Shown here: one piece after another, positions 1-24,786 of the stretch
How the letters are laid out: each line of letters starts with the position of its first letter
Position numbering within the stretch: position 1 is the first letter of the stretch
NCBI RefSeq assembly: GCF_006345805.1
Contig: NW_021836230.1
Coordinates: forward strand, 1-24,786
Reading direction: 5' to 3'
Length of the DNA stretch: 24,786 nt
DNA from: Octopus sinensis
Taxonomy: Eukaryota
Notes under the pieces: model-generated
Database searches by the model: none
Seen by the model: the letters and a program-made list of their open reading frames with translations, nothing else
Told to the model about the DNA's origin: nothing
Translations under genes and position numbers: made by a program

Positions 1-88
1 ATGAGAGAGCATCAAAATCTTTTAAGTGCTTAGGGCTTCTATGGATCTTAATCTGGTCCTCCTTACAATACAGGGTATTTTATATATA

Positions 89-146
<58 letters not shown>

Positions 147-182
147 CATACCTATAATATTATATATATTATATATATATCT

Positions 183-228
<46 letters not shown>

Positions 229-393
229 GTATAAACTTTAAAAAAAAGGTGTAGTGAATATACAAACGAACAAATACTAAATACACAGGCGAACAGAGAA
301 CACAGAAGGTCACCAACTCCTCATTAGTTATCGACCAGAGGGTCAAACGCAATTTCGGCCATTATCGATAATACTGCTTCCATATTGCTTCAC

Positions 394-557
394 ATATATA
401 TGACGGGCTCCTTTCAGTTTCCGTCAACCAAATCCACTCACAAGGCTTCGATCGGCCCGAGGCCATAGTAGAAGACACTTGTCCAATGTGCCGCGCAGTG
501 GAACTGAACCCGGAACCATGTGGTTTGAAGCATGCTTCTTACTACACACCTACGCCT
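394..557 (-). mobile_element. tRNA-derived octopus-type SINE, family 1 (head)
   Basis: Reverse strand has GTGTAGTAAGAAG...GGTTCCGGGTTCAGTTCC (A/B-box-like) then GGACAAGTGTCTTCTACTAT...GTGAGTGGATTTGG; homologous to copies at 4573, 5565, 5757 and 24510. Confidence 0.85.
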
Positions 558-708
558 ACTTTTCAGTATCCCAGTACAGCTGGACAGAGAAGGAGGTCCT
601 ATCATTCCCTAAACCAAGCGATAGGACTGATAGGGTGCGAATTTTAGATTTTTCAACTGCAAAGCAAGACACTGCTACCTCTTCGCTCAGTGTGTCAATG
701 GGTCTTAC

Positions 709-856
709 CTGATGGCTTGCTTGTATTTTCCCTGCATATAACAGTTAAAACTCATGCTTGTGTAGAGCAAAAGTGTTCGGTATTGAAGACGGCGGGCCTT
801 CAGGATCGGCAAAGCCTTCGTGTAATATTGCATAGCTTCTTTGTAGCCACCGGATT
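709..856 (-). CDS. STAND/NB-ARC-like gene, exon D (TPR repeats)
   Basis: Acceptor ttttatcattcaacag|AA (phase 1, matching exon C), donor ATCAG|GTAAGA (phase 2). Translation (E)SGGYKEAMQYYTKALPILKARRLQYRTLLLYTSMSFNCYMQGKYKQAI, with TPR signatures YxEAxxYYxKAL and GKYKQA. Confidence 0.88.
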
Positions 857-954
857 CTGTTGAATGATAAAACGTCGTTTGCAAATGAATAACTGAATAA
901 TGAACTGCATAAATTAATCAATAAAAGATGTACATACAGATTTAAATATGCATG

Positions 955-990
<36 letters not shown>

Positions 991-1020
991 CATGTATATA
1001 TATGTGTATATATAGGGAGA

Positions 1021-1170
1021 GTTTACGAAAAAAACAAAAGACGAAGACAGGTGGTGTACAAAACAAACAGATATATTAGTATAACGCTCAGGAATAGAAA
1101 AAGACTTTTACATTTCGAGCCTACGCTCTTCTACAGAAAGGGACACAGAAAAAAAAAACAAGGAGAGAAA
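1021..1170 (-). repeat. Second copy of the 10233-10386 repeat
   Basis: gtttacgaaaa...ggtggtgtacaaaacaaac...cgctcaggaatagaaa...tttcgagcctacgctcttctacagaaag. Confidence 0.75.
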
Positions 1171-1343
1171 CAATGAGAGAAAAAAAAGGAGAGAAAAAAT
1201 GAGAGTAAAAAGGAGAGAAAAAAGGAGAGGAGAGAAAAAAAGGAGAGAAAAAAGGAGAGAAACAAGGAGAGAAAAAATGTGTGTAGTAGCTAACGATCTA
1301 TCATGGCGACTGACTCCTATATGTATATACATACATACATACA

Positions 1344-1419
<76 letters not shown>

Positions 1420-1871
1420 CAAATTGGGATTTTACCAACAGGACAACAGCTTCAATTTCAGGACAACCTTATTTTCTGGAGTACACATACAAAGTTATAT
1501 CTAAAATACTAATCTAATAATCATTTTAAAGCCTACTATAACGTACAAGAAAATAAGGTACTGATAATATTAATCAACCCTACACGTGTTTCTGGCCTGG
1601 TGGTTTGGTTTGTTTTTCCAGGCTATACAACTTTACGGAAATTAATAATTTATTGTGAAATTTACCCCTATCAATACTTGTATATATTACCATTATTATG
1701 ACAAAGGTAAGTTAATAATATTTAAACAGTAAAAACCTCTACATATGTTATAAATTTATTTATTGAAATAAACTAGTAAATGAAACTATTTACCACAATA
1801 TATATATTATATATATATATATATAATATATATATATCTATATATATATATATATATTATATATATATATA

Positions 1872-2200
1872 TCTTTATATATAAAAGTAAGGTTGTGTGT
1901 CTGTCTCCTACGATTTAGATTCCTAACTACTCCCACATTTTGCGGTGCAGTTTAACCAAAAACGGGTATCTTATAGTCGTTATTCATATCGAGCCCTTCT
2001 GGGTATTAGCGCGCGTCTACGATGAGTCTACGATTTAAAAAACAATTTACCATAATTTTTCCGTATTTTTAATGCATTTTTACTCGGTTTATATAAGGGA
2101 AATAACTCTCTAAAAATGTATTATTAAATCTCAGAACGTAAAAAGCTACAGTAACACCCCTCTTTGTGGTTAGCCATATTGAGATAGGTGATACTGCTAG
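1872..2200 (+). mobile_element. Non-autonomous Helitron-like element
   Basis: Starts A|TCtttatatataaaag..gtgtgtctgtc and ends ctgCTAG|T, matching Helitron TC...CTRR termini inserted at an AT site. The subterminal hairpin is weak. Confidence 0.55.
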
Positions 2201-2579
2201 TATATATATATATTCATTATATCACTGATAATAATTTTATACACGGAATTCATTGTAAAATTGAAAAGAAAACAAACAAACAAATAAACAAACAATAAAA
2301 AGGTGGGTGCTATTAAACAAGTACAACTTCCGTTGTCTTTCAGAATCAACTATTATATAGAGTGGAGTGAAAGCAGAAAATGTTCTGCTTAGCTCAGAGT
2401 CAGGAAAGCATGAGGTATGTGTGTGTGTGTGTGATATGGCGCCTTTTGCATCTGTTTACGAGGCTAAGATTTAGATATCTAATATTTCATCGTCGTCGTC
2501 GTCATCGTCATCATCGTTATCACTGTTGTTATCATCATCATCATCATCACCATCATCATCATCATCGCCGTTGTCGTCG

Positions 2580-2616
<37 letters not shown>

Positions 2617-3006
2617 TTAGCATCCATGTTCCATTTGCCTGTATGCGTGCGTGTATACACACACACACACACACACACACAGCATATACAAACGCACAAA
2701 CGTATATAAAATAGTTAATTATATGCATGTGTGAGTGTGCGTATGTCTACGTAAACACAATCGCAGAAAAACATATGTATTTACCATGTTGTGTATATAA
2801 TAGTGTTCAGGTTTGTTTTCACGCGATAAACAGTGTTTATATTTATTTACGCGAAGACGTAGGCAGAACACCCTCAAATTAATTTTGTTCTTATACATGT
2901 ATACACTTATATCTTTATCTATGTACGTACGTACGTATGTGACATACGTGTGTATGTATATATGTACGTATATGTGTATGTGTGTGTGTGTGCGCGCGCG
3001 TATATA

Positions 3007-3062
<56 letters not shown>

Positions 3063-3210
3063 GATCTTCTATCTATCTATCATCTATCTATCTATCTATC
3101 TATCTATCTATATATATATAATATATATATTATTGATAAAACGGTAAGATACACAAGAAAGAAAGAGACCTCAATATTATGTAAATAGAGGAAATTTATC
3201 TATATAATAG

Positions 3211-4059
3211 GTTACATTACTCGGTAGTCAAGATAAAACTCTGAGTTCAGATGCCGAAGTGGAAATCCACAACACCATCTCTTCGGTTATCTGGCTATTT
3301 GAAAACGTTATGAAAAAATACGTTAAAATGAAGGGAAATTACTCTTTTATAATCTGCTTTGCCTGCGTACTTATACATCGCTCGCATTTTTCGTCATAAA
3401 AATTATATAAAAATACATAAAAATATATAAAAAATATAAAAAAATATAAAATCTTCTTGGGACATAACACAGAAAGCATGTTCTATCCGTTTTCTTTAGG
3501 GGAGACCAAAACGTAACAGGAATTTAGTCACATGTTGGGCATGATCCGAAAGCTCTGTCCTTGTATTTAGACATGTGGTAGGGTCTAAGCTGCTTTTCCA
3601 GATAAGCCATCTCTCCATGTCGCATAAACCGCACCTTCCGTTTATGCGACATGGATAGATGGCTTATCTGGAAAAGCAGCTTAGACCCTACCACATGTCT
3701 AAATACAAGGACAGAGCTTTTCGGATCATGCCCACATGTGACTAAATTCCTGTTACGTTTTTGGTCCCCTAAAGAAAACGGATAGAACATGCTTTCTGTG
3801 TTATGTCCCAAGAAGATTTTATATATTTTTATATATTTTTATATATTTTATGTATTTTTATATAATTTTTATGACGAAAAATGCGAGCGATGTATAAGTA
3901 CGCAGGCAAGCAGAGTTATAACAGAGTAATTTCCCTTCATTTTAACGTAATTTTTTCATAACGTTTCAAATAGCCAGATAACCGAAGAATGGTGTTGGTG
4001 GATTTCCACTTCGGCATCTTGAAACTCAGAGTTTTATCTTGACTACCGAGTAATGTAAC
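3211..4059. mobile_element. Foldback/MITE-like palindromic element (~419 bp arms, 10 nt loop)
   Basis: gttacattactcggtagtcaagataaaactctgag... is the reverse complement of ...ctcagagttttatcttgactaccgagtaatgtaac. Pairing continues to the loop at 3630-3639. Inverted symmetry extends loosely to 3197-4073. Confidence 0.9.
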
Positions 4060-4333
4060 ATATTGTATAGATATATTATAATATATATATATAATATATA
4101 TACTATATATATATATATATACTATATATTATATTTTATATAAAAGAGAAGTTTGAAAACGCCACTATATAAGATAAATTTTAATTTTCTTAGAAATTTT
4201 ACATGTTTCGCTTCTTCTTGAACAAACGAACCTTATCAAAAATATTTAAAAAGTTAAGTGAAATAAAAAAGTTCGTAATTGTTTCTTACTAGTCTCAACA
4301 GAATCTACGTGGGTTGTTTTTTGTGGGGAGGAA

Positions 4334-4401
<68 letters not shown>

Positions 4402-4572
4402 TATATATGTATAATTATATATATATATATTATATATATATTTATATTATACATGCGAAACGAGACATGCAACATAAAGAATATTCCCCTTCTTCAGTTG
4501 TCCCTGTTTTCATCTACTCCGCGTTTCGAAGTCAAGGAAATATATATATATATATGTATATATTTCCAAGCT

Positions 4573-4700
4573 GATAGTTCCGGCTTCAGTCCCACTGCGT
4601 GACATTTTGGGCAAGTGTCTTCTACTATAGTCTCGGGTCAACCAAAGCCTTGTGAGTGCATTTGGTTGAAGGAAACTCAAAGAAGCCCATCGTATACATA
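4573..4700 (+). mobile_element. SINE family 1, 5'-truncated
   Basis: ttcagtcccactgcgtgacattttgggcaagtgtcttctactatagtctcgggtcaaccaaagccttgtgagtg followed by a (CATA)n tract. Confidence 0.85.
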
Positions 4701-4888
4701 CATACATATATACATACATACACATACACATACATACATACATACATACATACATACACACACGCTCGCGCAAAATTTACAATTTTTTAATTGAACACAA
4801 CATAAACAAGAGATGCAAAAAGAGGGTGTGATGGGAGAGAACGAGAAAAACGTTAAAACGTCGGTGGTCAAAAAAGTCAGCTTCGAAT

Positions 4889-4928
4889 AAGCGGCGGCAA
4901 ATAAGCGGCGGCAAATAAGCGGCGGCAG
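4889..4928 (+). repeat. 14 bp tandem repeat AATAAGCGGCGGCA x3
   Basis: Direct inspection; possibly a DNA-transposon subterminal repeat. Confidence 0.8.
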
Positions 4929-5087
4929 AATGGCCGTGCCAAAATGCCATATAATACCCGATTTAGTTGCTATTTATTATTGCTCCAGCAACATTTTAAA
5001 GGCCCCCCCCCCCCGCTACTTAAGCAGTCAAACTGATATACTAAGTATAAAGGCAATAAAATAGACAGCTACATAGCACTATCTTAC

Positions 5088-5244
5088 CTGGGTAAGCTGT
5101 GAGAGCCCTTCCGTAGATGGCCATCATTAAAGCTTGTTCTTCACGGTTTCCAAAAAGGTAAGAATAGTCCAGACAACCTCGGAAGAAATCTTTCGATATT
5201 CTTGGATAACACAAAGATATTATGCATTCTGCAAGAAGAGCAAT
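5088..5244 (-). CDS. STAND/NB-ARC-like gene, exon C (helical/TPR region)
   Basis: Acceptor ttttttttttacag|ATT (phase 0), donor CCAG|GTAAGA (phase 1). Translation IALLAECIISLCYPRISKDFFRGCLDYSYLFGNREEQALMMAIYGRALTAYP(E). This frame is not in the ORF track. Confidence 0.85.
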
Positions 5245-5284
5245 CTGTAAAAAAAAAAGAAATTTTATATATATATATATGCGT

Positions 5285-5474
5285 ATATTGTTTGCCTGTT
5301 TCAGTCATTAGACTGCGGCCATGCTGGGGCACCGGTTTGAAGAATTTTAGTCGAACGAATCGACTCCGGTACTTATTTTTTAAAGTTTTGTATTTATTCT
5401 ATCGCATCTCTTTTGCCAAACTGCTAAGTTACGGGGACGTAAACACACTAATACTGGGTGTCAAACGGTGGTGG

Positions 5475-5572
<98 letters not shown>

Positions 5573-5727
5573 TGGGCTTCTTCCAGTTTCCATCTACCAA
5601 ATCCACTCACAAGGCTTTGGTGGGCCTGACGTCATAGTAGAAGACACTTGCCCAAGGTACCACACAGTGGGACTAAACCCAGAACCATGTGGTTGGGAAG
5701 CAAACTTTCTACCATAAAACCATTCCT
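5285..5727 (-). mobile_element. SINE family 1, near full length (head, internal TA/CA microsatellite, tail)
   Basis: Head at 5565-5727; tail at 5285-5475 (ccaaactgctaagttacggggacgtaaacac) is the reverse complement of the tail in the 24510 copy. Confidence 0.8.
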
Positions 5728-5756
5728 GCACCACACACACACACACACGCACACAC

Positions 5757-5905
5757 ACGTCGGGCTTCCACACAGTTTTCGCCAACCAGACTCACTCACA
5801 AGGTATTGGTCATCCCGGGGCTATAACAGAATACACTTGCCCAAGGTGTCGTGCAGTGGAACTGAACCCGAAACCACGCAGTTGCGAGTCACATACTTTC
5901 CACAC
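5757..5905 (-). mobile_element. SINE family 1 head, diverged
   Basis: cactcacaagg...acacttgcccaaggtgtcgtgcagtggaactgaaccc matches the other copies. Confidence 0.8.
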
Positions 5906-5965
5906 AATTCTATTCATTCTTTTATTAATGTCATTCTATTCTATTTCCTTCATTATATTTTGCTA

Positions 5966-6110
5966 ATCCACCGAGGTCGATTTTACCTTTCATCCTCTCG
6001 GGGGGGGGGTCGATAAATTAAGTACCAGTTGCGTACTGGGGTCGATCTAATCGACTCCCCCTCCACACTTCCCAAACATTTCGGGCCTTGTGCCTCGAAT
6101 AGAAAAGATT
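5966..6110 (+). mobile_element. SINE family 2-related fragment with a different tail
   Basis: ccgaggtcgattttacctttcatcc...gtcgataaattaagtaccagttgcgtactggggtcgat. Confidence 0.8.
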
Positions 6111-6610
6111 ATATTTTGCTAACACAAACAAACTGTAGATTCCAAGCTGCCTCGTATTTTCACCTATTTAATTAGCTGCCCTATTTCCTATACTTACCTT
6201 CATTCGAGCCTCCTACTTACAATATAATATAATAATATAATATAATATATATATATATTTATATACATATGTACATGTATATATGTATATATTAAACTAC
6301 AACCATTCCTACTTCTCAAAGATTGTATAAGCGATATTTTTTTTTACAAGTGGTCTTTATTAAGATTTTGACACTTTGCCAGATAAGACCGTTGTAACTC
6401 GTAAACACGAATTGCTTCTGCGACTTTATTTAAACCATACGTGTATGCATACAAACATACGTACGTACATGCATACATGCATACATACATACATACATAC
6501 ATACAAGCATACATACATGCATGCATACATGCATACATGCATACATACATAAACATACATACACACATACATACATGCACACATACATACATACACACAT
6601 ACATACATAC

Positions 6611-6786
6611 GGTTACGACGACGAGGGTCTCAGCTGATACGATCAATGGAACAGCCTGCTCGTGAGATTAACGTGCAAGTGGCTGAGCACTCCACAGACA
6701 CGTGTACCCTTAACGTAGTTCTCAGGGAGATTCAGCATGACACAGAGTGTGACAAGGCCGGCCCTTTGAAATACAGGTACAACTCA
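6611..6786 (-). mobile_element. SINE family 3, 3' portion
   Basis: ggttacgacgacgagggtctcagctgatacgatcaatggaacagc...ctccacagac matches 12685-12775. Confidence 0.75.
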
Positions 6787-6882
6787 CTGTCGTCACTTCC
6801 AGTTTCTGTCACAATTTACTTTCATTGTTTTTAGGACGATTTACTTTCACTTTTTTTAATGCATGTTAACCGAGATATTTAC

Positions 6883-7902
6883 CTGGAAGTATATTTTATA
6901 ACTTTCTTCGATGTTTGTAAGGTGAATCCCTTGACGCATGGATTGGCTTATTTTCTCCCAGTTGTCGTTTGCAATTCCAACTGATTCGAACAAAAGTCCC
7001 TTATTGTAGATATCTTCCGCCGTCTGTAAAGCTTTCCCTAGTATTTTTGAATATTTGAGGTAAATAACATCATTACAATATACATGAGTGAAGGACCCGT
7101 TAACATAGCGATACATCACTGATTTAAGCCGTTTACGAGTAAACTGCAACATTATTTGACTGACTTGTTTACCTAATCGAAGTCTTTGGAAATTGATTTT
7201 AGAGATTGTTTTTAAGTTCTCTGTTTGAAAATTTCCTTTTAAACATAATATATTCGTCTGGTTTTGTCCTTGATCTCTGTTGTTTCGTTGTGTTTTTCTA
7301 GGAGTTAAATGCTTTCCTATATGGTCAATCACACGTGAGAATTGGTCGACATTTCCTTCCCCTTGGCACACAGCAAAGCCATCTTTACTGCAGAGGTACG
7401 AACAAATATCTTCTAACGAATATTTCGACAAATGATTTGATAATAATTTAGCAAGAGCTGTGAGCAAACCAGGCCGGAAGTTAGAATAAGCGGTGATAAA
7501 ATCTATGCAAATGTCCGCCTCTTTTGAAACATCAGCTTTGGATATTTGATAGAAAAGCAGACGTGAATCGGAAGCGGTTAGTGGAAGAAGATTGTATTCT
7601 TTCCAAGAAATATCCTTCAACGGAAACGGTTTCCAGTGAGCCATAATGAGAATAAATTTCTTATTGCAATGCGAAGATGAAAAGGAACGAAGGAAATGCT
7701 GAAATTCTTGGTGCCATTTGGGGTTCAACTTGTGGAAATCATCAAAAACGTAGATATTAATGCATTGTTGGTTGCTTTGATTGCTTCCAGAAAATTCTTT
7801 GAACCGTTTCTCTCGAATCGTTTTCCAGTCTTCAGAAGAGAAACTAACAATGTCTAGATGTATTTCTTGAGGATATTTTTCGCGTTTTAATTCATCCAAT
7901 AC
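6883..7902 (-). CDS. STAND/NB-ARC-like gene, exon B (340 aa: Walker B, helical and winged-helix region, start of helical repeats)
   Basis: Acceptor ttttgtctgttttcag|GTA and donor CAG|GTAAAT, both phase 0. Splicing gives GKTYFVKT|VLDELKRE. Walker B INIYVFDDF, RNBS-C-like YNLLPLTASDSRLLF, GLPL-equivalent YSNFRPGLLTALAKLL. No stops over 1020 nt in AT-rich DNA. Confidence 0.9.
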
Positions 7903-8054
7903 CTGAAAACAGACAAAACAAAGAATCACAATTATATTATAATTAATATTATACAATCTATATACTTATATACTTAGAATAAATATAAGAAAAGTTCCGT
8001 CTAATGACGTAATATAACAGGTATGTATGATAATAGCTAGAGTTGGCTTTTTCC

Positions 8055-8144
8055 TCTCTGAAGACGGCGTGGTTAGCTTAAATGGAAATCTTTGCCAATG
8101 ACCTATGCACCATAAGCACAGCTTTCCTAGAAACAGCTGTAAGA
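8055..8144 (+). ncRNA. Hammerhead-like motif with intact core and long, imperfect stem II
   Basis: TCT-CTGAAGA...GAAA-CAGCTG-TA-AGA; same GAAACAGCTG helix III as 19370-19379. Confidence 0.4.
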
Positions 8145-8929
8145 AATCTTATGCATTACTTCTTAATCCCTTATTTACTCTATCAACTCCGTAACTGTTT
8201 AAATCATAAATTACATACTCTAGAATGATGTCACATGTTTTGCTTGTTCATTATTTCTTTTTAATATATACCTTGTTCGTTATTTCTTTTTAATATATAC
8301 CTACATATATTTATTATACATGCACAAGATATTAAGTAAGAAATAATTCTATTTTTTTGTTTTGTGCAGAATTATTTCATTCACCAATGCTCAGAGATAA
8401 ACATATGCACATACGTAAGAGCAGAAGGGCTCTATTGCTGTTGTCAACGAACATAAGTTGTATACATACATGCTGACAGCGACCGTAAATAGCCGGAAAG
8501 CGGAGAGCGGGATATCCCTTTTCCGTACAGTTTCAGCTTTAGACCGAAAGTCTCATCAGAAGGGTCGGCAGAAATCGGTAGATTCCGGACAAACATCGCC
8601 ACGAAGATATATGTCCACTCCATAAAAATTTATGGATGATTTAGCGAATCGCTAATGTGTATACAAATAATTAACTGAGACAGCTAGTTTGTAGGGTTTC
8701 ATCAAAAACGAAAGCAAAAATTGTCATCAAACATGACTGAGGGTATTAGAAGATCTACACTGCTAGAAATAAGAGCTGAAGGGCTTCTGTTGCTGTTGTC
8801 AATGCACATATACATACATGGTGGCAGCGAGTGTAAATGGCCGGAATGTGGCGATTGTGATGTCCCTTTTTTCTTTTTTAGGTGGTGGTGTGTTTGTTGC
8901 AGTATGTGTGTATATATATATTATATGTA

Positions 8930-9230
8930 TACCACTACCACCACCACCACCACCAAAACTACCAAAACCACCACCACTACCATCACTACCACTACCACCG
9001 CCACCACCACCACCACCACCACTACCATCACCATCACCACCACCACCAAAACTACCAAAACCACCACCACCACCAAAACCATCAAAACCACCAAAACCAC
9101 CACCACCACCAAAACTACCAAAAACCACCATCACTACCAATACCACCACCGTCACCAGCACGATCACCATGACTACTAACACACCACCACACCACCACCA
9201 CCACCAAGCCCCTCCACCACCTGCATCAAC
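8930..9230 (+). repeat. Compound (CCA)n/(CCAAAA) microsatellite in intron A-B
   Basis: Direct inspection; source of the Gly-, Pro-, Thr- and His-rich ORFs. Confidence 0.95.
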
Positions 9231-9272
9231 TAGTGACGTCATAGGTGTCGTCTGCCATTTTCTCTTGCTTAC

Positions 9273-9461
9273 CGTTTTAACAAAGTATGTCTTCCCGATG
9301 TGTGGAAGTCCGTAGATTTGAATGAGGGCGACATCTTTTTGTAAGAGAAAGCGTTTCAATGTTGCTCTCTCTTCGTTTCGTCCGATAAAGACTGGTGGAG
9401 ACGGCTTCATCTTTTCTTTTTCTCCTTTTGGCCCTGCTGCTGTGTCTGTTTCTAATGACAT
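9273..9461 (-). CDS. STAND/NB-ARC-like NTPase-TPR gene, coding exon A (NTPase start and Walker A); 5' boundary uncertain
   Basis: Reads MSLETDTAAGPKGEKEKMKPSPPVFIGRNEERATLKRFLLQKDVALIQIYGLPHIGKTYFVKT. Contains the PPVFIGRxxE motif typical of NB-ARC starts and Walker A GLPHIGKT. Donor ACG|GTAAGC at 9273/9272 (phase 0). Likely acceptor ctctttcatctag| at 9496/9495. Confidence 0.85.
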
Positions 9462-9499
9462 CAATCATGTAAGACAGACGGCGGCTGAGAACATTCTAG

Positions 9500-10012
9500 A
9501 TGAAAGAGAAAGGTATAAAGAATAATAGTGTGAGTGAGGGGGAGAGAGGGGTATTAGAGAGAAAGGGAAAGAGAAAGAGAGGGGAGAAAGGGGGAGAAAG
9601 GGGAGAGAAAGAGGGAGAGAGAGAAATAGACAAGGTAGACGGCGAAATATAGAGACAGAAAGAGAGAGATAGATGAGAAAGAGAGAGAGAGACAGATATA
9701 AAGAGATATACAGAGAGAAGGAGAGATAAATTGAAAGAGAGAGAGTGAGAGAGAGACAGAGACAGAGAAAGACCAACAGAAAGAGACAGAGAGATCAATA
9801 GAGAGAAGGAGAGATAAATTGGGAAAGAGAAAGAGTGAGAGAAAAAACAAACAAGACAGAAACAGCAGAATATAGTGAGAGAAAGAGAGAGCGATTGAGA
9901 GAGAAAAAGAGAGGCAGAGAAGAAGGAGAGGGCGATTGGGAGAGAAAGAGAGAGAGGAAGAGACAGAAGGAGAGAGCGATTGAGAGAGAAAGAAAGAGAG
10001 GCAGGACAGAAG
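9500..10012 (+). repeat. GA-rich polypurine/polypyrimidine tract (~500 bp)
   Basis: Direct inspection. Confidence 0.9.
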
Positions 10013-12412: not shown

Positions 12413-12415
<3 letters not shown>

Positions 12416-12532
12416 GGGGTCGATAAATTAAGTACCAATTACGCACTTGGATCGATGTAATCGACTTAATCCGTTTGTCTGTCCTTGTTTGTCCCCTCTA
12501 TGTTTAGCCCCTTGTGGGTAATAAAGAAACAG
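12413..12532 (+). mobile_element. SINE family 2, 3' half
   Basis: ttcggggtcgataaattaagtacc...gccccttgtgggtaataaagaaa, embedded in (TAT)n. Confidence 0.85.
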
Positions 12533-12551
12533 AATTATTATTATTATTACC

Positions 12552-12616
<65 letters not shown>

Positions 12617-17227: not shown

Positions 17228-17650
17228 ATATTTCTTTACCACCCACAAGGGGCTAAAAAACAGAGGGGCACAAACAAGGACAGACAAACGGATTTGAAGT
17301 CGATTACATCGACTCCAGTGCAAACTGGTACGTTATTTATCGCCCCGAAAGGATGATGAAAGGCAAAGTCGAACCTCGGGCGGAATTTGAAATCAGAAAC
17401 GAGCGGCAGACGAAATAACTATTTCTTTACTACCCACAAGGGGCTACACACAGAGGGGACAAATAAGGACAGACAAACGGATGAAGTGATTACATCGACC
17501 CCAGTGCGAAGCTGGTACTTTATTTATCGACCCCGAAAGGATGAAAGGCAAAGTCGACCTCGGCGGAATTTGAACTCAGAACGTAACGGCAGACGAAATA
17601 TGGCTACGCATTTCGTCCGGCGTGCTAACGTTTCTGCCAGCTCGCCGCCT
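17228..17650 (-). mobile_element. Two head-to-tail SINE family 2 copies (17420-17650 full; 17228-17419 5'-truncated)
   Basis: Both are reverse complements of the 23432-23662 element. Confidence 0.88.
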
Positions 17651-18034
17651 TATGAGGGGAGAATATAGAAAGGTAGGCAGCCAGGAGAGTTTCCAATGCT
17701 GAGAATATGCAAACGCTTAGGGTCTCTCAAACTCCTGAACAAGCTGCGTCCAGGAATGCATAAAATGTTTTTACCAAGAGGAGAGAGAGAGAGGGCATAT
17801 TAGAAACACCTGAACAAGATGAATCTAAGTGAGATTCCAATGTAGGCAACATCAGAAGAGTAAGGGGTTCAGAATCACTAGAGCAATCAGAAACCTTAGG
17901 GCTTCCAATGTTGTACAGGGGCTAGCTTAGAAGCCGTCCCCGATAAGGTTCGAAAATCGATTAAGGTTGTGCATCGTTTTTTCAGGCTGTGGAGAAATGG
18001 TTAAAATTTGCGCCGTTTGTAATTGTACAATACG

Positions 18035-23077: not shown

Positions 23078-23431
23078 TAGAATACCAGCATGTTTTCAGA
23101 TATCGATGACGCATATAGTTCGTAGGTTTATCAAAAATTAATTATAAGCAACGGAAGCAGTTTTAATACGTAGGGGTCATCTTTAAACCCAACTTGACAT
23201 GGATGCCTTGTTAGAACACCGAAGACTACGTTATTAGCCTTGAAAAATCCTATTACGTAGGCACTTGGTGCATAAAGGCACACGCATAGATCGTAGTACA
23301 CAAAATTCATCTGTCATGGGGCACCGGAATTCCCCTATCACGGGATTTCGTTCTATTGGACGTCATCAGTGAATGGTATCCGGTGACTGCACGCCAGTCA
23401 AATCTCGGTGACACAATATATAAAATTTCAA

Positions 23432-23662
23432 GTCGGCGAGCTGACAGAAACGTTAGCACGTCGGGCGAAATGCTTAGCGGTATTTCGTCTGTCGTTACGT
23501 TCTGAGTTCAAATTCCGCCAAGGTCGACTTTGCCTTTCATCATTTCGGGGTCGATTAAATAAGTACCAGTTACGCACTGGGTTCGATATAATCGACTTAA
23601 TACTTATGTCTGTCCTTGTTTGTCCCCTCTGCGTGTAGCCCCTTGTGGGCAGTAAAGAAATA
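23432..23662 (+). mobile_element. tRNA-derived SINE family 2, full length
   Basis: ggcgagctgacagaaacgttagcacg...tgagttcaaattccgccaaggtcgactttgcctttcatc...agtaaagaaata; homologous to four other copies in the window. Confidence 0.88.
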
Positions 23663-24509
23663 ACAATATATAGAATTTCAGCATCTTTTAAGGCGCTGAT
23701 GTCGCAAACAGCTAGCAGGCTTATTAAAAATAAATTATTAGCCAAGGAAGCACTATTAATACTCAAAGCCAATCTCTATATCCAACTAAACATGGATACC
23801 TTGTTAGAACACCGAATCCTGCCTTATTGGCCTGGTGCACAAAAGTATATACATTGATTGGAAAAGTTTCTTCAAACAGATTTCGGAAATTGAAAACGGT
23901 TTTGGAATCGACAACAAAATGTTTCGTTGCTGTCATTTGTCACTCTATACAGCAAGATACTGTCCCCTTTTGAACCCCATCTAGGCCAAGAAGCTAACTG
24001 GTTCCTTACTGGTAAGACCACAATGATCCCTATAAATGCATGCTTGTCCGTCGAAGCGACAAGGACCATCCTTACAGATAACGGAAGACTTGCGCAGTGA
24101 GTTTCTTTTAACGTTGAGAAGCTTTTCGTACCGCCAACCTCAGTCTCTCGCTCGTTGCCTTCAATCCACTCGCAAGACCTCGTCTTACTGACCTCATCCT
24201 TCTTTTTGCCCTCTACAATGCGTTGCTGCTGCCGCTTGGCTCTCCGTTGAGCTTCGAAGTTTTCTTCCTCAGAGTCCATCGGATCTAGCATTCACAAGCA
24301 TAGGTATGAAAGTTCGAATACGCAAATTAACCCATAGCTGAGGCCTGGTCGGAATAGATTTGGGTAGAATGGTGACTAAGAAGTGGTTCCACACAGCTCA
24401 AAACCCTGGAACTCCCGGGCCAGGGCCCCGCTACCGGATGAAGGAAAAACAGATGCCATAAGGAAACAGGCCGTCAGCACTTGGGAATATTCACAATTTA
24501 TAAAATATA

Positions 24510-24786
24510 GGCGTATGCGTGGTTGTGTGGTAAGAAGCTTGCTTACCAACCACATGGTTCCGAGTTCAGTTCCGCTGTGTGGCACCTTGGGCAAGTGTCT
24601 TCTGTTATAGCCTCGGGTCGACCAAAGCCTTGTGGGTCGATTTGGTAGACGGAAACTAAAAGTAAGCCGTCGTATATAAATGTGCATGTGTTTGTGTTTG
24701 TGTTTGTCCTCCATTCCCGCTTGACAACCGGTGTTACATTGTTTACGTCCCCGTAGCGGTTTGGCAAAAGAAGCCGATAGAAAAGT
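24510..24786 (+). mobile_element. SINE family 1, running off the window end
   Basis: ggcgtatgcgtggttgtgtggtaagaagcttgcttaccaaccacatggttccgagttcagttcc head, then conserved body and tail. Confidence 0.88.

What the first reader, a model, noticed from the sequence alone, without database searches (positions are those of the whole stretch)
709..9495. Spliced NLR-like STAND NTPase-TPR receptor gene hidden among microsatellites
Four exons join with consistent phases (0,0,1) into at least 504 aa: PPVFIGR, Walker A GLPHIGKT, Walker B IYVFDD, RNBS-C-like and GLPL-like helices, a winged-helix region, then TPRs (QALMMAIYGRALTAYPESGGYKEAMQYYTKAL). Only exons A and B appear in the ORF track, and exon A is disguised by intron read-through. 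NB-ARC plus TPR is the established layout of prokaryotic antiviral STAND (Avs) proteins and fungal NLRs, whereas vertebrate NLRs are NACHT-LRR. Inference: a little-characterised cephalopod pattern-recognition or cell-death switch. Sensor-1 (FILIMAH rather than ITSR/ITTR) and the GxP motif (NFRP) are divergent, and no N-terminal effector domain is visible, so it may be a sensor-only or 'headless' member.
Basis: partly seen in the sequence, partly recalled or inferred. Interest (0 to 1): 0.8.

Follow-up and report, generated by a model that had tools for sequence, protein, structure and literature searches.

The report
Octopus NB-ARC-like STAND ATPase–TPR gene fragment
The four exons are real and encode the front 60% of an octopus protein of the NB-ARC/STAND "molecular switch" type followed by TPR repeats; the gene is already in RefSeq as an uncharacterised protein and belongs to a kind of protein already known from other invertebrates, so it is a sound but fairly ordinary find.

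Summary
Observation confirmed. On the minus strand, four exons (9461-9273, 7902-6883, 5244-5088, 856-709) join in frame through canonical GT/AG sites in phases 0, 0 and 1. The product is identical to RefSeq "uncharacterized protein LOC115232051" of Octopus sinensis. The window is the whole 24.8-kb scaffold.

The gene is cut short. The Argonauta orthologue has 10 coding exons and 826 aa, and the window holds only exons 1-4. The RefSeq stop is the TAA inside the exon-4 donor.

Pfam hits on the protein itself are sub-threshold. A cephalopod-only profile of the nucleotide-binding module, however, finds full-length matches in mollusc, hemichordate, octocoral and bacterial proteins. Of 45 tested, 38 carry Pfam NB-ARC and 33 carry TPR_12. 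A second-iteration profile hits plant NLRs, an archaeal STAND-TPR protein, Apaf-1 and AfsR in the PDB.

Walker A and B are intact. The sensor-1 Arg and the MHD His are lost, and the winged helix is degenerate. No N-terminal effector exists in the family. dN/dS is about 0.25-0.38.

It is not a NACHT-LRR NLR, not an Avs and not NPHP3. An immune or cell-death role is inference only. Animal NB-ARC/NACHT-TPR proteins are already known from Hydra, corals and placozoans, so this is a new member of a known kind.

The parts
9273..9461 (-). Coding exon 1 (63 codons). ATG at 9461-9459, with an in-frame TGA at 9467-9465 just upstream. Holds the FIGR motif (9389-9378) and Walker A GLPHIGKT (9311-9288). Donor is acg|GTAAGC.
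   Evidence: tblastn with P0003 and P0004.
7903..9272 (-). Intron 1 (1370 nt). Contains the ACC/GGT microsatellite (8931-9206) that extends the exon-1 ORF by read-through.
6883..7902 (-). Coding exon 2 (340 codons), holding the rest of the nucleotide-binding module.
- Walker B IYVFDD: 7755-7738.
- Sensor-1 strand FILIMAHWK: 7656-7630. The Arg is replaced by Trp, with Lys next to it.
- GLPL-like NFRPGLL: 7482-7462.
- Degenerate winged-helix motif ILCLKGNF: 7251-7228.
- Lys at the MHD-His position: 7125-7123.
- First TPR-like helices: from 7074.
   Evidence: dN/dS is 0.25-0.38 against L002 and 0.15 against Argonauta.
5245..6882 (-). Intron 2 (1638 nt). Holds CA, TA and CATA microsatellites and SINE-like repeat copies (5529-5722, 5752-5884).
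5088..5244 (-). Coding exon 3 (157 nt, ends in phase 1). Helical repeat region IALLAEC...QALMMAIYGRALTAYP.
   Evidence: The alternative acceptor at 5228 gives stops.
857..5087 (-). Intron 3 (4231 nt). Holds microsatellites, a SINE-like copy (4563-4733) and a large palindrome (3249-4019).
709..856 (-). Coding exon 4 (148 nt). TPR helices ESGGYKEAMQYYTKALPILKARRLQYRTLLLYTSMSFNCYMQGKYKQAI. Ends at the donor cag|GTAAGA. Read-through gives AGG TAA (stop at 707-705), which is the stop used by the 505-aa RefSeq model.
1..708 (-). Start of intron 4, running to the end of the scaffold. No trace of exons 5-10 of the orthologue.
   Evidence: The tblastn at E<=10 found nothing here. Argonauta exons 5-10 are shown.

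Best explanation
Positions 709-9461 (minus strand) hold the first four of about ten coding exons of Octopus sinensis LOC115232051. The gene encodes a cytoplasmic STAND-class P-loop NTPase of the NB-ARC (AP-ATPase) type, joined directly to a C-terminal TPR_12-type repeat array. It has no N-terminal effector domain.

The protein belongs to a small cephalopod subfamily. That subfamily includes this lineage, which has an Argonauta orthologue, and a cluster of at least three paralogues on one O. vulgaris chromosome. It sits inside a wider family of NB-ARC-TPR proteins of marine invertebrates, whose next relatives are bacterial BTAD/NB-ARC/TPR regulators.

Likely mechanism, inferred from the family and not shown here:
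- The TPR array holds the nucleotide-binding module in a closed state.
- Binding of a protein or peptide ligand releases it.
- The nucleotide-binding modules then oligomerise into a signalling platform.
- With no N-terminal effector, output must go through a partner protein or through the conserved C-terminal tail, which is not in the window.

The sensor-1 Arg and the MHD His are replaced, so the nucleotide switch is probably modified. Binding is probably kept, because Walker A and B are intact. Hydrolysis or ADP-locking is probably weakened.

The 505-aa RefSeq product is an artefact of the scaffold end, not a naturally short protein.
For: Shown:
- Exon structure and identity to the RefSeq model.
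- Exon structure conserved in Argonauta (10 exons) and in three O. vulgaris paralogues.
- Purifying selection on exon 2: dN/dS 0.25 (NG86) or 0.38 (YN00) against a genomic contig at 89.9% nucleotide identity from a related octopus, with one codon indel and no stops. Against Argonauta it is 0.15.
- A cephalopod-only NOD profile scored against 1.84 billion proteins gave 263 hits at E<=1e-3. Most span profile positions 14-330.
- Of 45 of those hits, 38 carry Pfam NB-ARC (best 6e-144), 33 TPR_12 and 34 AAA_16.
- The NB-ARC hits overlap the matched region: P0022 794-1031, P0024 256-476, P0017 26-221.
- Named relatives are bivalve, gastropod, hemichordate and octocoral proteins. One is called 'NB-ARC domain-containing' by UniRef.
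- The second-iteration profile against the PDB gave Sr35 8.8e-16, MLA13 2.4e-13, Roq1 2e-11, archaeal STAND-TPR PH0952 2.7e-11, ZAR1 2.8e-10, Apaf-1 2.3e-7 over the whole NOD, and AfsR 1.7e-4.
- Motif-by-motif alignment.
- The AF2 model of residues 1-344 has pLDDT about 90 over the five-strand P-loop core and helical lid. Foldseek returns NRC1/2/3 and Sr35 among AAA+ folds.
- TPR_12 scores 55-71 bits in the full-length orthologues, above the 30.1 cut-off.
- There is an in-frame stop upstream of the ATG of the homologue P0004.

Inferred: the ligand-induced oligomerisation mechanism, from established knowledge of STAND proteins such as MalT, Apaf-1 and plant NLRs (for example PMC4381067).
Against: - No Pfam NTPase model other than the generic AAA model reaches its gathering score on the window protein itself. 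AAA scores 22.6 bits against 21.2, and NB-ARC scores 13.7 against 23.5.
- The cephalopod-only profile finds NRC4 in the PDB only at E=0.014, so NB-ARC membership is transitive.
- Foldseek cannot separate STAND from clamp-loader or ORC AAA+ folds. RFC is the top hit.
- The winged-helix region is modelled at pLDDT below 50 and is degenerate in this gene and in Argonauta.
- The sensor-1 Arg and the MHD His are absent.
- There is no expression, localisation or infection data for this gene.
- That P0004's contig is an mRNA is inferred from its uninterrupted ORF, not known.
Confidence: 0.8

Rival explanations
1. It is a nephrocystin-3-like or other housekeeping TPR scaffold, for example for cilia or transport, and not a sensor. 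The P-loop module would be a structural relic.
For: - NCBI names the Mercenaria relative 'nephrocystin-3-like'.
- Of 45 relatives, 9 hit TPR_NPHP3 and 7 hit NPHP3_N.
- TPR_12 and TPR_10 repeats are also those of kinesin light chain (own knowledge).
- The sensor-1 Arg and the MHD His are lost.
Against: - The window protein and its orthologues give no NPHP3_N or TPR_NPHP3 hit.
- TPR_NPHP3 scores in relatives are far below the 100-bit cut-off.
- The protein starts at the P-loop, without the long N-terminal region of NPHP3 (own knowledge).
- The family is narrow and fast-evolving: 62% identity Octopus to Argonauta, and 30% between paralogues.
- It is locally duplicated. That is unlike a one-to-one housekeeping orthologue.
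Confidence: 0.07
2. It is a pseudo-switch. The protein keeps the STAND fold but no longer cycles nucleotide, and acts as a constitutive TPR adaptor or as a decoy or regulator of other STAND proteins.
For: - The sensor-1 Arg is replaced by Trp, and by Gly in paralogues.
- The MHD His is replaced by Lys, and by Gln in P0004, in the paralogues and in bivalve relatives.
- The winged-helix motif has decayed and carries a 4-residue deletion and a low-complexity insert in the Octopus and Argonauta lineage.
- The winged-helix region has pLDDT below 50.
- There is no effector domain.
Against: - Walker A GKT and Walker B DD are invariant across the family.
- Lys154, next to the lost Arg, is conserved in five of the six family sequences aligned.
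- Exon 2 is under purifying selection.
- Gln at the MHD position is common in the wider mollusc family, so it may be a working variant.
Confidence: 0.1
3. The copy in this window is a non-functional fragment. It would be either an unplaced haplotig or a partial duplicate of a gene that lies complete elsewhere in the genome.
For: - It sits on a 24.8-kb unplaced scaffold that ends inside intron 4.
- Only one RefSeq protein is on record, on one contig.
- No O. vulgaris orthologue was returned by the protein searches.
Against: - All four exons are open, with canonical splice sites.
- Exon 2 is also open in a related species, with dN/dS below 0.4.
- Truncation exactly at a scaffold end is the usual signature of an assembly break.
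Confidence: 0.03

Closest known systems
Invertebrate NB-ARC/NACHT-TPR 'NOD-like' proteins (Hydra, Acropora, Trichoplax; mollusc proteins such as Potamilus KAK3596952 and Mercenaria XP_053396229)
   Same: - Central NB-ARC-type nucleotide-binding module followed by TPR_12/TPR_10 repeats.
- Animal genes with introns and lineage-specific duplication.
- Full-length NOD matches at E 1e-7 to 1e-12 to the mollusc members.
- The Gln or other non-His residue at the MHD position, and the non-Arg sensor-1, are shared with the bivalve members.
- The architecture is documented in PMC7642931 and PMC6321704.
   Different: - Many cnidarian and placozoan members carry N-terminal Death, DED, CARD or TIR domains. 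This family has none.
- The cephalopod clade is so divergent that Pfam NB-ARC does not reach threshold.
- The winged helix is degenerate in this gene.
Plant NLR NB-ARC domains (Sr35, MLA13, ZAR1, NRC, Roq1) and Apaf-1
   Same: These are the best solved-structure matches of the family profile, at E 9e-16 to 2e-7. The matches run from the P-loop through the GLPL helix into the winged helix. The motif order is the same: Walker A, Walker B, RNBS-B, RNBS-C, GLPL.
   Different: - The repeat domain is TPR, not LRR or WD40.
- There is no CC, TIR or CARD head.
- The sensor-1 Arg and the MHD His are missing.
Prokaryotic STAND-TPR proteins: archaeal PH0952 (PDB 6mfv), AfsR/BTAD-NB-ARC-TPR regulators and MalT
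   Same: The layout is NOD then TPR. PH0952 matches at 2.7e-11 and AfsR at 1.7e-4. Bacterial BTAD-NB-ARC-TPR proteins are among the profile hits (P0024). The FxGR-x-E motif ahead of the P-loop is typical of AAA_16-type STANDs.
   Different: - They have DNA-binding output domains (BTAD, LuxR).
- They are prokaryotic.
- They have canonical TSR sensor-1 and His at MHD.
Avs (antiviral STAND) defence proteins of bacteria
   Same: STAND NTPase plus C-terminal TPR-like sensor. They use ligand-induced oligomerisation (own knowledge).
   Different: - No PADLOC Avs model matches. Only PDC-S27 matches weakly, at the P-loop.
- Avs proteins carry N-terminal nuclease or other effector domains. This family has none.
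Vertebrate-type NLRs (NACHT-LRR)
   Same: Both are STAND-class switches, in the broad sense.
   Different: The NTPase clade is different: NB-ARC was hit by 38 of 45 relatives against 18 of 45 for NACHT, and the NACHT hits were weaker. There are no LRRs. By the definition used in PMC3879445 this is not a bona fide NLR.

Membership tests
STAND NTPase, NB-ARC (AP-ATPase) clade | Walker A GxxxxGK[ST] | tested here: met
   GLPHIGKT at 9311-9288. It is conserved in every aligned family sequence that includes the N-terminus.
STAND NTPase, NB-ARC (AP-ATPase) clade | Walker B hhhhDD/DE | tested here: met
   IYVFDD at 7755-7738. D117 and D118 are invariant.
STAND NTPase, NB-ARC (AP-ATPase) clade | Sensor-1 / RNBS-B arginine (TTR/TSR) | tested here: not met
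   The aligned position reads AHW, followed by Lys154. Paralogues read SGW or SGG. Bacterial relatives read TSR. Bivalve relatives also lack the Arg (TSTT, TSQK).
STAND NTPase, NB-ARC (AP-ATPase) clade | RNBS-C and GLPL (GxP) helices of the helical lid | tested here: met
   LLPLTASDSRLLF aligns with L.PL...eS..L. NFRPGLL aligns with GLPL. P207, G208, L209 and L210 are invariant. Paralogues read GLPGLL. The first Gly is Phe in this gene.
STAND NTPase, NB-ARC (AP-ATPase) clade | Winged-helix domain ending in the MHD histidine | tested here: not met
   The region aligns (LSxFxGxF becomes LCLKGNF). The His is Lys323 here, Lys in Argonauta, and Gln in P0004, P0008 and bivalve relatives. AF2 pLDDT is below 50.
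STAND NTPase, NB-ARC (AP-ATPase) clade | Pfam PF00931 above its gathering score | tested here: not met
   13.7 bits against 23.5 for the window protein. P0004 scores 17.7 and P0008 scores 23.0.
STAND NTPase, NB-ARC (AP-ATPase) clade | Significant profile-level homology over the whole NOD to proteins that are NB-ARC by Pfam or by solved structure | tested here: met
   One search gave E down to 3e-12 outside cephalopods, spanning profile positions 14-330. One search found NB-ARC in 38 of 45. One search hit Sr35 at 8.8e-16 and Apaf-1 at 2.3e-7.
STAND NTPase, NB-ARC (AP-ATPase) clade | Nucleotide-dependent oligomerisation | not testable with these tools
   Needs biochemistry.
TPR repeat proteins (TPR_12 type) | Pfam TPR_12 above threshold | tested here: inconclusive
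   The part in the window scores only 13.3 bits (E 0.098) and hits CTPR designs at 9e-4. Full-length orthologues score 55-71 bits against 30.1, and the window residues align with their first repeats.
Animal NLR sensu stricto (NACHT-LRR) | NACHT domain and C-terminal LRRs | tested here: not met
   No NACHT or LRR hit in the protein or its orthologues.
Avs (prokaryotic antiviral STAND) | Match to Avs models, and an N-terminal effector domain | tested here: not met
   PADLOC gives only PDC-S27 at the P-loop and a generic TPR model. There is no N-terminal domain.
Nephrocystin-3 | NPHP3_N NTPase and TPR_NPHP3 domains, with a long N-terminal region | tested here: not met
   Neither model hits the window protein or P0003, P0004 or P0008. 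The protein starts about 25 residues before the P-loop.

The most novel reading that the evidence does not exclude
Cephalopods may have evolved an 'effector-less' NB-ARC-TPR lineage in which the classical nucleotide lock is rewired: the sensor-1 Arg becomes Trp-Lys and the MHD His becomes Lys or Gln. Output would be delegated to a new Cys-containing C-terminal tail or to a partner protein. This would be a STAND sensor working by a non-canonical switch, possibly an intracellular immune receptor class specific to cephalopods.
Probability: 0.12. Interest if true: 0.55.

Novelty: new member of a known kind. Interest (0 to 1): 0.3.

Why it matters
Cephalopod intracellular immunity is poorly charted. 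The precomputed annotation for this protein lists no domain at all. Placing LOC115232051 and its paralogue cluster in the NB-ARC-TPR STAND family gives these 'uncharacterized proteins' a testable role. It also adds cephalopods to the animals that keep NB-ARC-TPR proteins.

The practical points are modest:
- The RefSeq model is truncated by the scaffold end.
- Two O. vulgaris paralogue models lack their P-loop exon.
- Domain scans at standard thresholds miss the whole clade.

Nothing here shows an immune function.

Tried and rejected
- Direct Pfam, PDB-sequence and PADLOC scans of the spliced protein gave only sub-threshold P-loop and TPR hits, so they were not decisive.
- The word-seeded homologue search found only 6 relatives. 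It failed again with alignments as queries. Only the exhaustive profile search reached beyond cephalopods.
- The cephalopod-only profile against the PDB was too weak: NRC4 at 0.014.
- The first AF2 model, from 6 sequences, was poor at pLDDT 56. The second, from 18 sequences, was good for the P-loop core and lid but not for the winged helix.
- Foldseek on both models mixes RFC, ORC and Cdc6 with NLRs, so the fold cannot assign the clade.
- The alternative acceptor for exon 3 at 5228 was rejected because it gives stops.
- The search for further exons of the gene in the window, upstream of 9461 or in 1-708, found nothing.
- Other ORFs of the window have no Pfam match. There is no Rfam family or tRNA.
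- The NPHP3 orthologue idea was rejected.
- The literature search for cephalopod NLRs or NB-ARC proteins turned up nothing specific.

Full report
**What the window is.** The spliced protein is 100% identical to RefSeq 'uncharacterized protein LOC115232051 [Octopus sinensis]' (505 aa). Its only contig on record is 24,786 bp long, so the window is a whole unplaced scaffold. It is AT-rich (22-45% GC) and packed with microsatellites.

**Check of the observation.** On the minus strand the four exons are 9461-9273, 7902-6883, 5244-5088 and 856-709.
- All donors are GTAAG or GTAAA. All acceptors are a pyrimidine tract plus CAG. The introns are 1370, 1638 and 4231 nt.
- The exon lengths are 189, 1020, 157 and 148 nt. 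They give phases 0, 0 and 1, and 504 codons plus two bases.
- A second possible acceptor for exon 3, at 5228, produces stops.
- The remark about the ORF track is right. Exon 1 is buried in a 221-aa ORF that reads on into an (ACC)n microsatellite. Exons 3 and 4 lie in ORFs shorter than 60 aa.

**Independent support for the junctions.**
- The Argonauta hians orthologue (P0003, 826 aa, 62% identity) hits the four exons at E = 7e-13, 2e-104, 1e-27 and 6e-24, with boundaries at the same residues.
- Its own gene has ten coding exons, and the first four correspond one-to-one.
- Three O. vulgaris paralogue loci have the same first four exons.
- An 845-aa homologue (P0004, 44% identity) is read from a single uninterrupted ORF on a 2882-nt contig, most simply an mRNA. 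It aligns through all three junctions without any gap.

**The gene is truncated.** Exon 4 ends at a consensus donor (cag|GTAAGA). Read-through gives AGG TAA, and that TAA (707-705) is the stop of the 505-aa RefSeq model. The scaffold ends 708 bp further on, and nothing there resembles the next exon. The orthologues continue for about 320 residues, with more TPRs and a conserved tail. So '504 aa' is the first 60% of the protein. 'Sensor-only' cannot be judged from the window alone.

**Is it a live gene?** A 1476-nt genomic contig from a related octopus (L002) is 89.9% identical over exon 2 and its flanks. Exon 2 is open in both, with one codon indel. dN/dS is 0.25 (NG86) or 0.38 (YN00). Against Argonauta exon 2, dN/dS is 0.15, with dS saturated. 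This indicates purifying selection of moderate strength.

**What the protein is.**
- Direct scans are weak. AAA scores 22.6 bits, AAA_22 scores 22.6, AAA_16 scores 16, NB-ARC scores 13.7 (cut-off 23.5) and TPR_12 scores 13.3.
- PDB sequence search returns only designed TPRs.
- In full-length orthologues, TPR_12 is clear at 55-71 bits.
- I built a profile of the nucleotide-binding module from cephalopod sequences only (A2, 338 positions) and scored it against 1.84 billion representative proteins. It gave 263 hits at E<=1e-3 and 10 at E<=1e-10. Most cover profile positions 14-330, which is the whole module.
- Of 45 of these hits, 38 carry Pfam NB-ARC (best 6e-144), 34 AAA_16, 33 TPR_12, 18 NACHT (weaker) and 7 BTAD.
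- Where checked, the NB-ARC match lies on the same residues as my profile match.
- The nearest named relatives are animal proteins:
  - Mercenaria ('nephrocystin-3-like'), Solemya, Pecten, Saccostrea and Ylistrum.
  - Potamilus (UniRef: 'NB-ARC domain-containing protein').
  - Haliotis, the hemichordate Glandiceps and the octocoral Dendronephthya.
- Bacterial BTAD-NB-ARC-TPR proteins follow these animal proteins.
- A second-iteration profile (A4, 18 cephalopod and other invertebrate NODs) hits solved structures: Sr35 (8.8e-16), MLA13, Roq1, the archaeal STAND-TPR protein PH0952 (2.7e-11), ZAR1, NRC1-4, ADR1, Apaf-1 (2.3e-7, whole NOD) and AfsR.

These results place the protein in the NB-ARC/AP-ATPase clade of STAND NTPases. 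The link is transitive, not direct.

**Structure.** With six sequences the AF2 model was poor (pLDDT 56). With 18 sequences, residues 25-235 reach pLDDT about 90. They form a five-stranded P-loop core followed by a four-helix lid. Residues 264-344 stay below 50. Foldseek returns RFC, ORC and Cdc6 together with NRC1/2/3, Sr35 and the archaeal ATPase PAB2304. The fold is AAA+/STAND, but the clade cannot be told from it.

**Motif anatomy.**
- FIGR-x2-E lies ahead of the P-loop.
- Walker A is GLPHIGKT, and Walker B is IYVFDD with an invariant DD.
- The sensor-1 strand is FILIMAHWK. The Arg of TSR/TTR is Trp here and Gly in the paralogues. The next residue, Lys154, is Lys in five of the six family sequences aligned; P0008 has Glu there.
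- The RNBS-C-like motif is LLPLTASDSRLLF.
- The GLPL-like motif is NFRPGLL, with PGLL invariant. The paralogues read GLPGLL.
- The winged-helix motif LSxFxGxF survives as LCLKGNF. It has a four-residue deletion after it and a low-complexity insert before it.
- The MHD His is Lys323. It is Lys in Argonauta, and Gln in P0004, in the paralogues and in bivalve relatives.

**No head.** The contig of the homologue P0004 has an in-frame stop upstream of its ATG. The Argonauta model starts eight residues before FIGR. In the window a TGA lies one codon upstream of the ATG. The family therefore begins at the NOD. The only uncharacterised part is a tail of about 100 aa after the TPRs, with a CxxC...C pattern and no Pfam hit. 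It is not in the window.

**Family size.** In O. vulgaris, three paralogues about 91% identical to each other lie within about 420 kb on OX597836.1, at 42.17-42.59 Mb. They are about 30% identical to the window protein. Local duplication and fast divergence are typical of NLR-like families, but they prove nothing about function.

**Mechanism.** By analogy with MalT, Apaf-1 and plant NLRs (established knowledge; for example PMC4381067), the TPR array should hold the NOD closed. Ligand binding should allow opening, nucleotide exchange and oligomerisation. Output would need a partner or the C-terminal tail. Loss of the sensor-1 Arg and the MHD His suggests an altered lock. All of this is inference.

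**Comparison with what is known.**
- NACHT/NB-ARC proteins with TPRs are abundant in Hydra (103 in H. viridissima) and present in Acropora (PMC7642931) and Trichoplax (PMC6321704).
- Strict animal NLRs are NACHT-LRR (PMC3879445), and this protein is not one.
- It matches no Avs model.
- It lacks the NPHP3 domains.
- My literature searches found nothing specific on cephalopod NB-ARC proteins.

**Verdict.** The gene is real, conserved and already annotated. It is correctly read by the first stage as an NB-ARC-like STAND-TPR protein, but it is truncated by the scaffold end, belongs to a known kind, and its immune role is untested. Interest 0.3.

Noticed in passing
window 3249-4019 (intron 3): Large palindrome. 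The outer arms (3249-3503 and 3765-4019) are 88% complementary. The inner arms (3549-3629 and 3640-3720) are 99% complementary with a 10-nt loop. It may be a hairpin-forming insertion or an inverted duplication.
   Followed up: no
window 394-529, 4563-4733, 5529-5722, 5752-5884, 24520-24687: Five copies, in both orientations and 70-85% alike, of an interspersed element of about 130-170 nt that looks like a SINE. There is no tRNA or Rfam match.
   Followed up: partly
window 12413-12557, 17488-17651, 23430-23688: A second interspersed repeat. The copies are 81-90% alike and one pair is inverted. Its ORFs have no Pfam hit.
   Followed up: partly
window 705-707: The stop codon of the 505-aa RefSeq model is the TAA inside the exon-4 splice donor GTAAG. 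The model is truncated by the scaffold end.
   Followed up: yes
L004 8282-8443; L005 7937-8101; L006 17891-18034 (O. vulgaris OX597836.1): The gene models of the paralogues P0006 and P0005 start inside exon 2. They miss the P-loop exon that tblastn finds about 1.5 kb upstream. The model of P0008 skips the equivalent of exon 4.
   Followed up: partly
O. vulgaris OX597836.1, 42.17-42.59 Mb (L004, L005, L006): Three paralogues of the family, about 91% identical to each other, lie in a cluster of about 420 kb. Two are in one orientation and one in the other.
   Followed up: partly
P0003 residues ~730-826 and P0004 ~750-845 (outside the window): There is a conserved C-terminal tail after the TPRs with a CxxC...C pattern and no Pfam match. 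It is a candidate output or zinc-binding module of the family.
   Followed up: no
window 8931-9206 and 9556-10000: A long imperfect (ACC)n array lies in intron 1, and an (AG)n-rich tract of about 450 nt lies directly upstream of the start codon. Both create long spurious ORFs on both strands.
   Followed up: no
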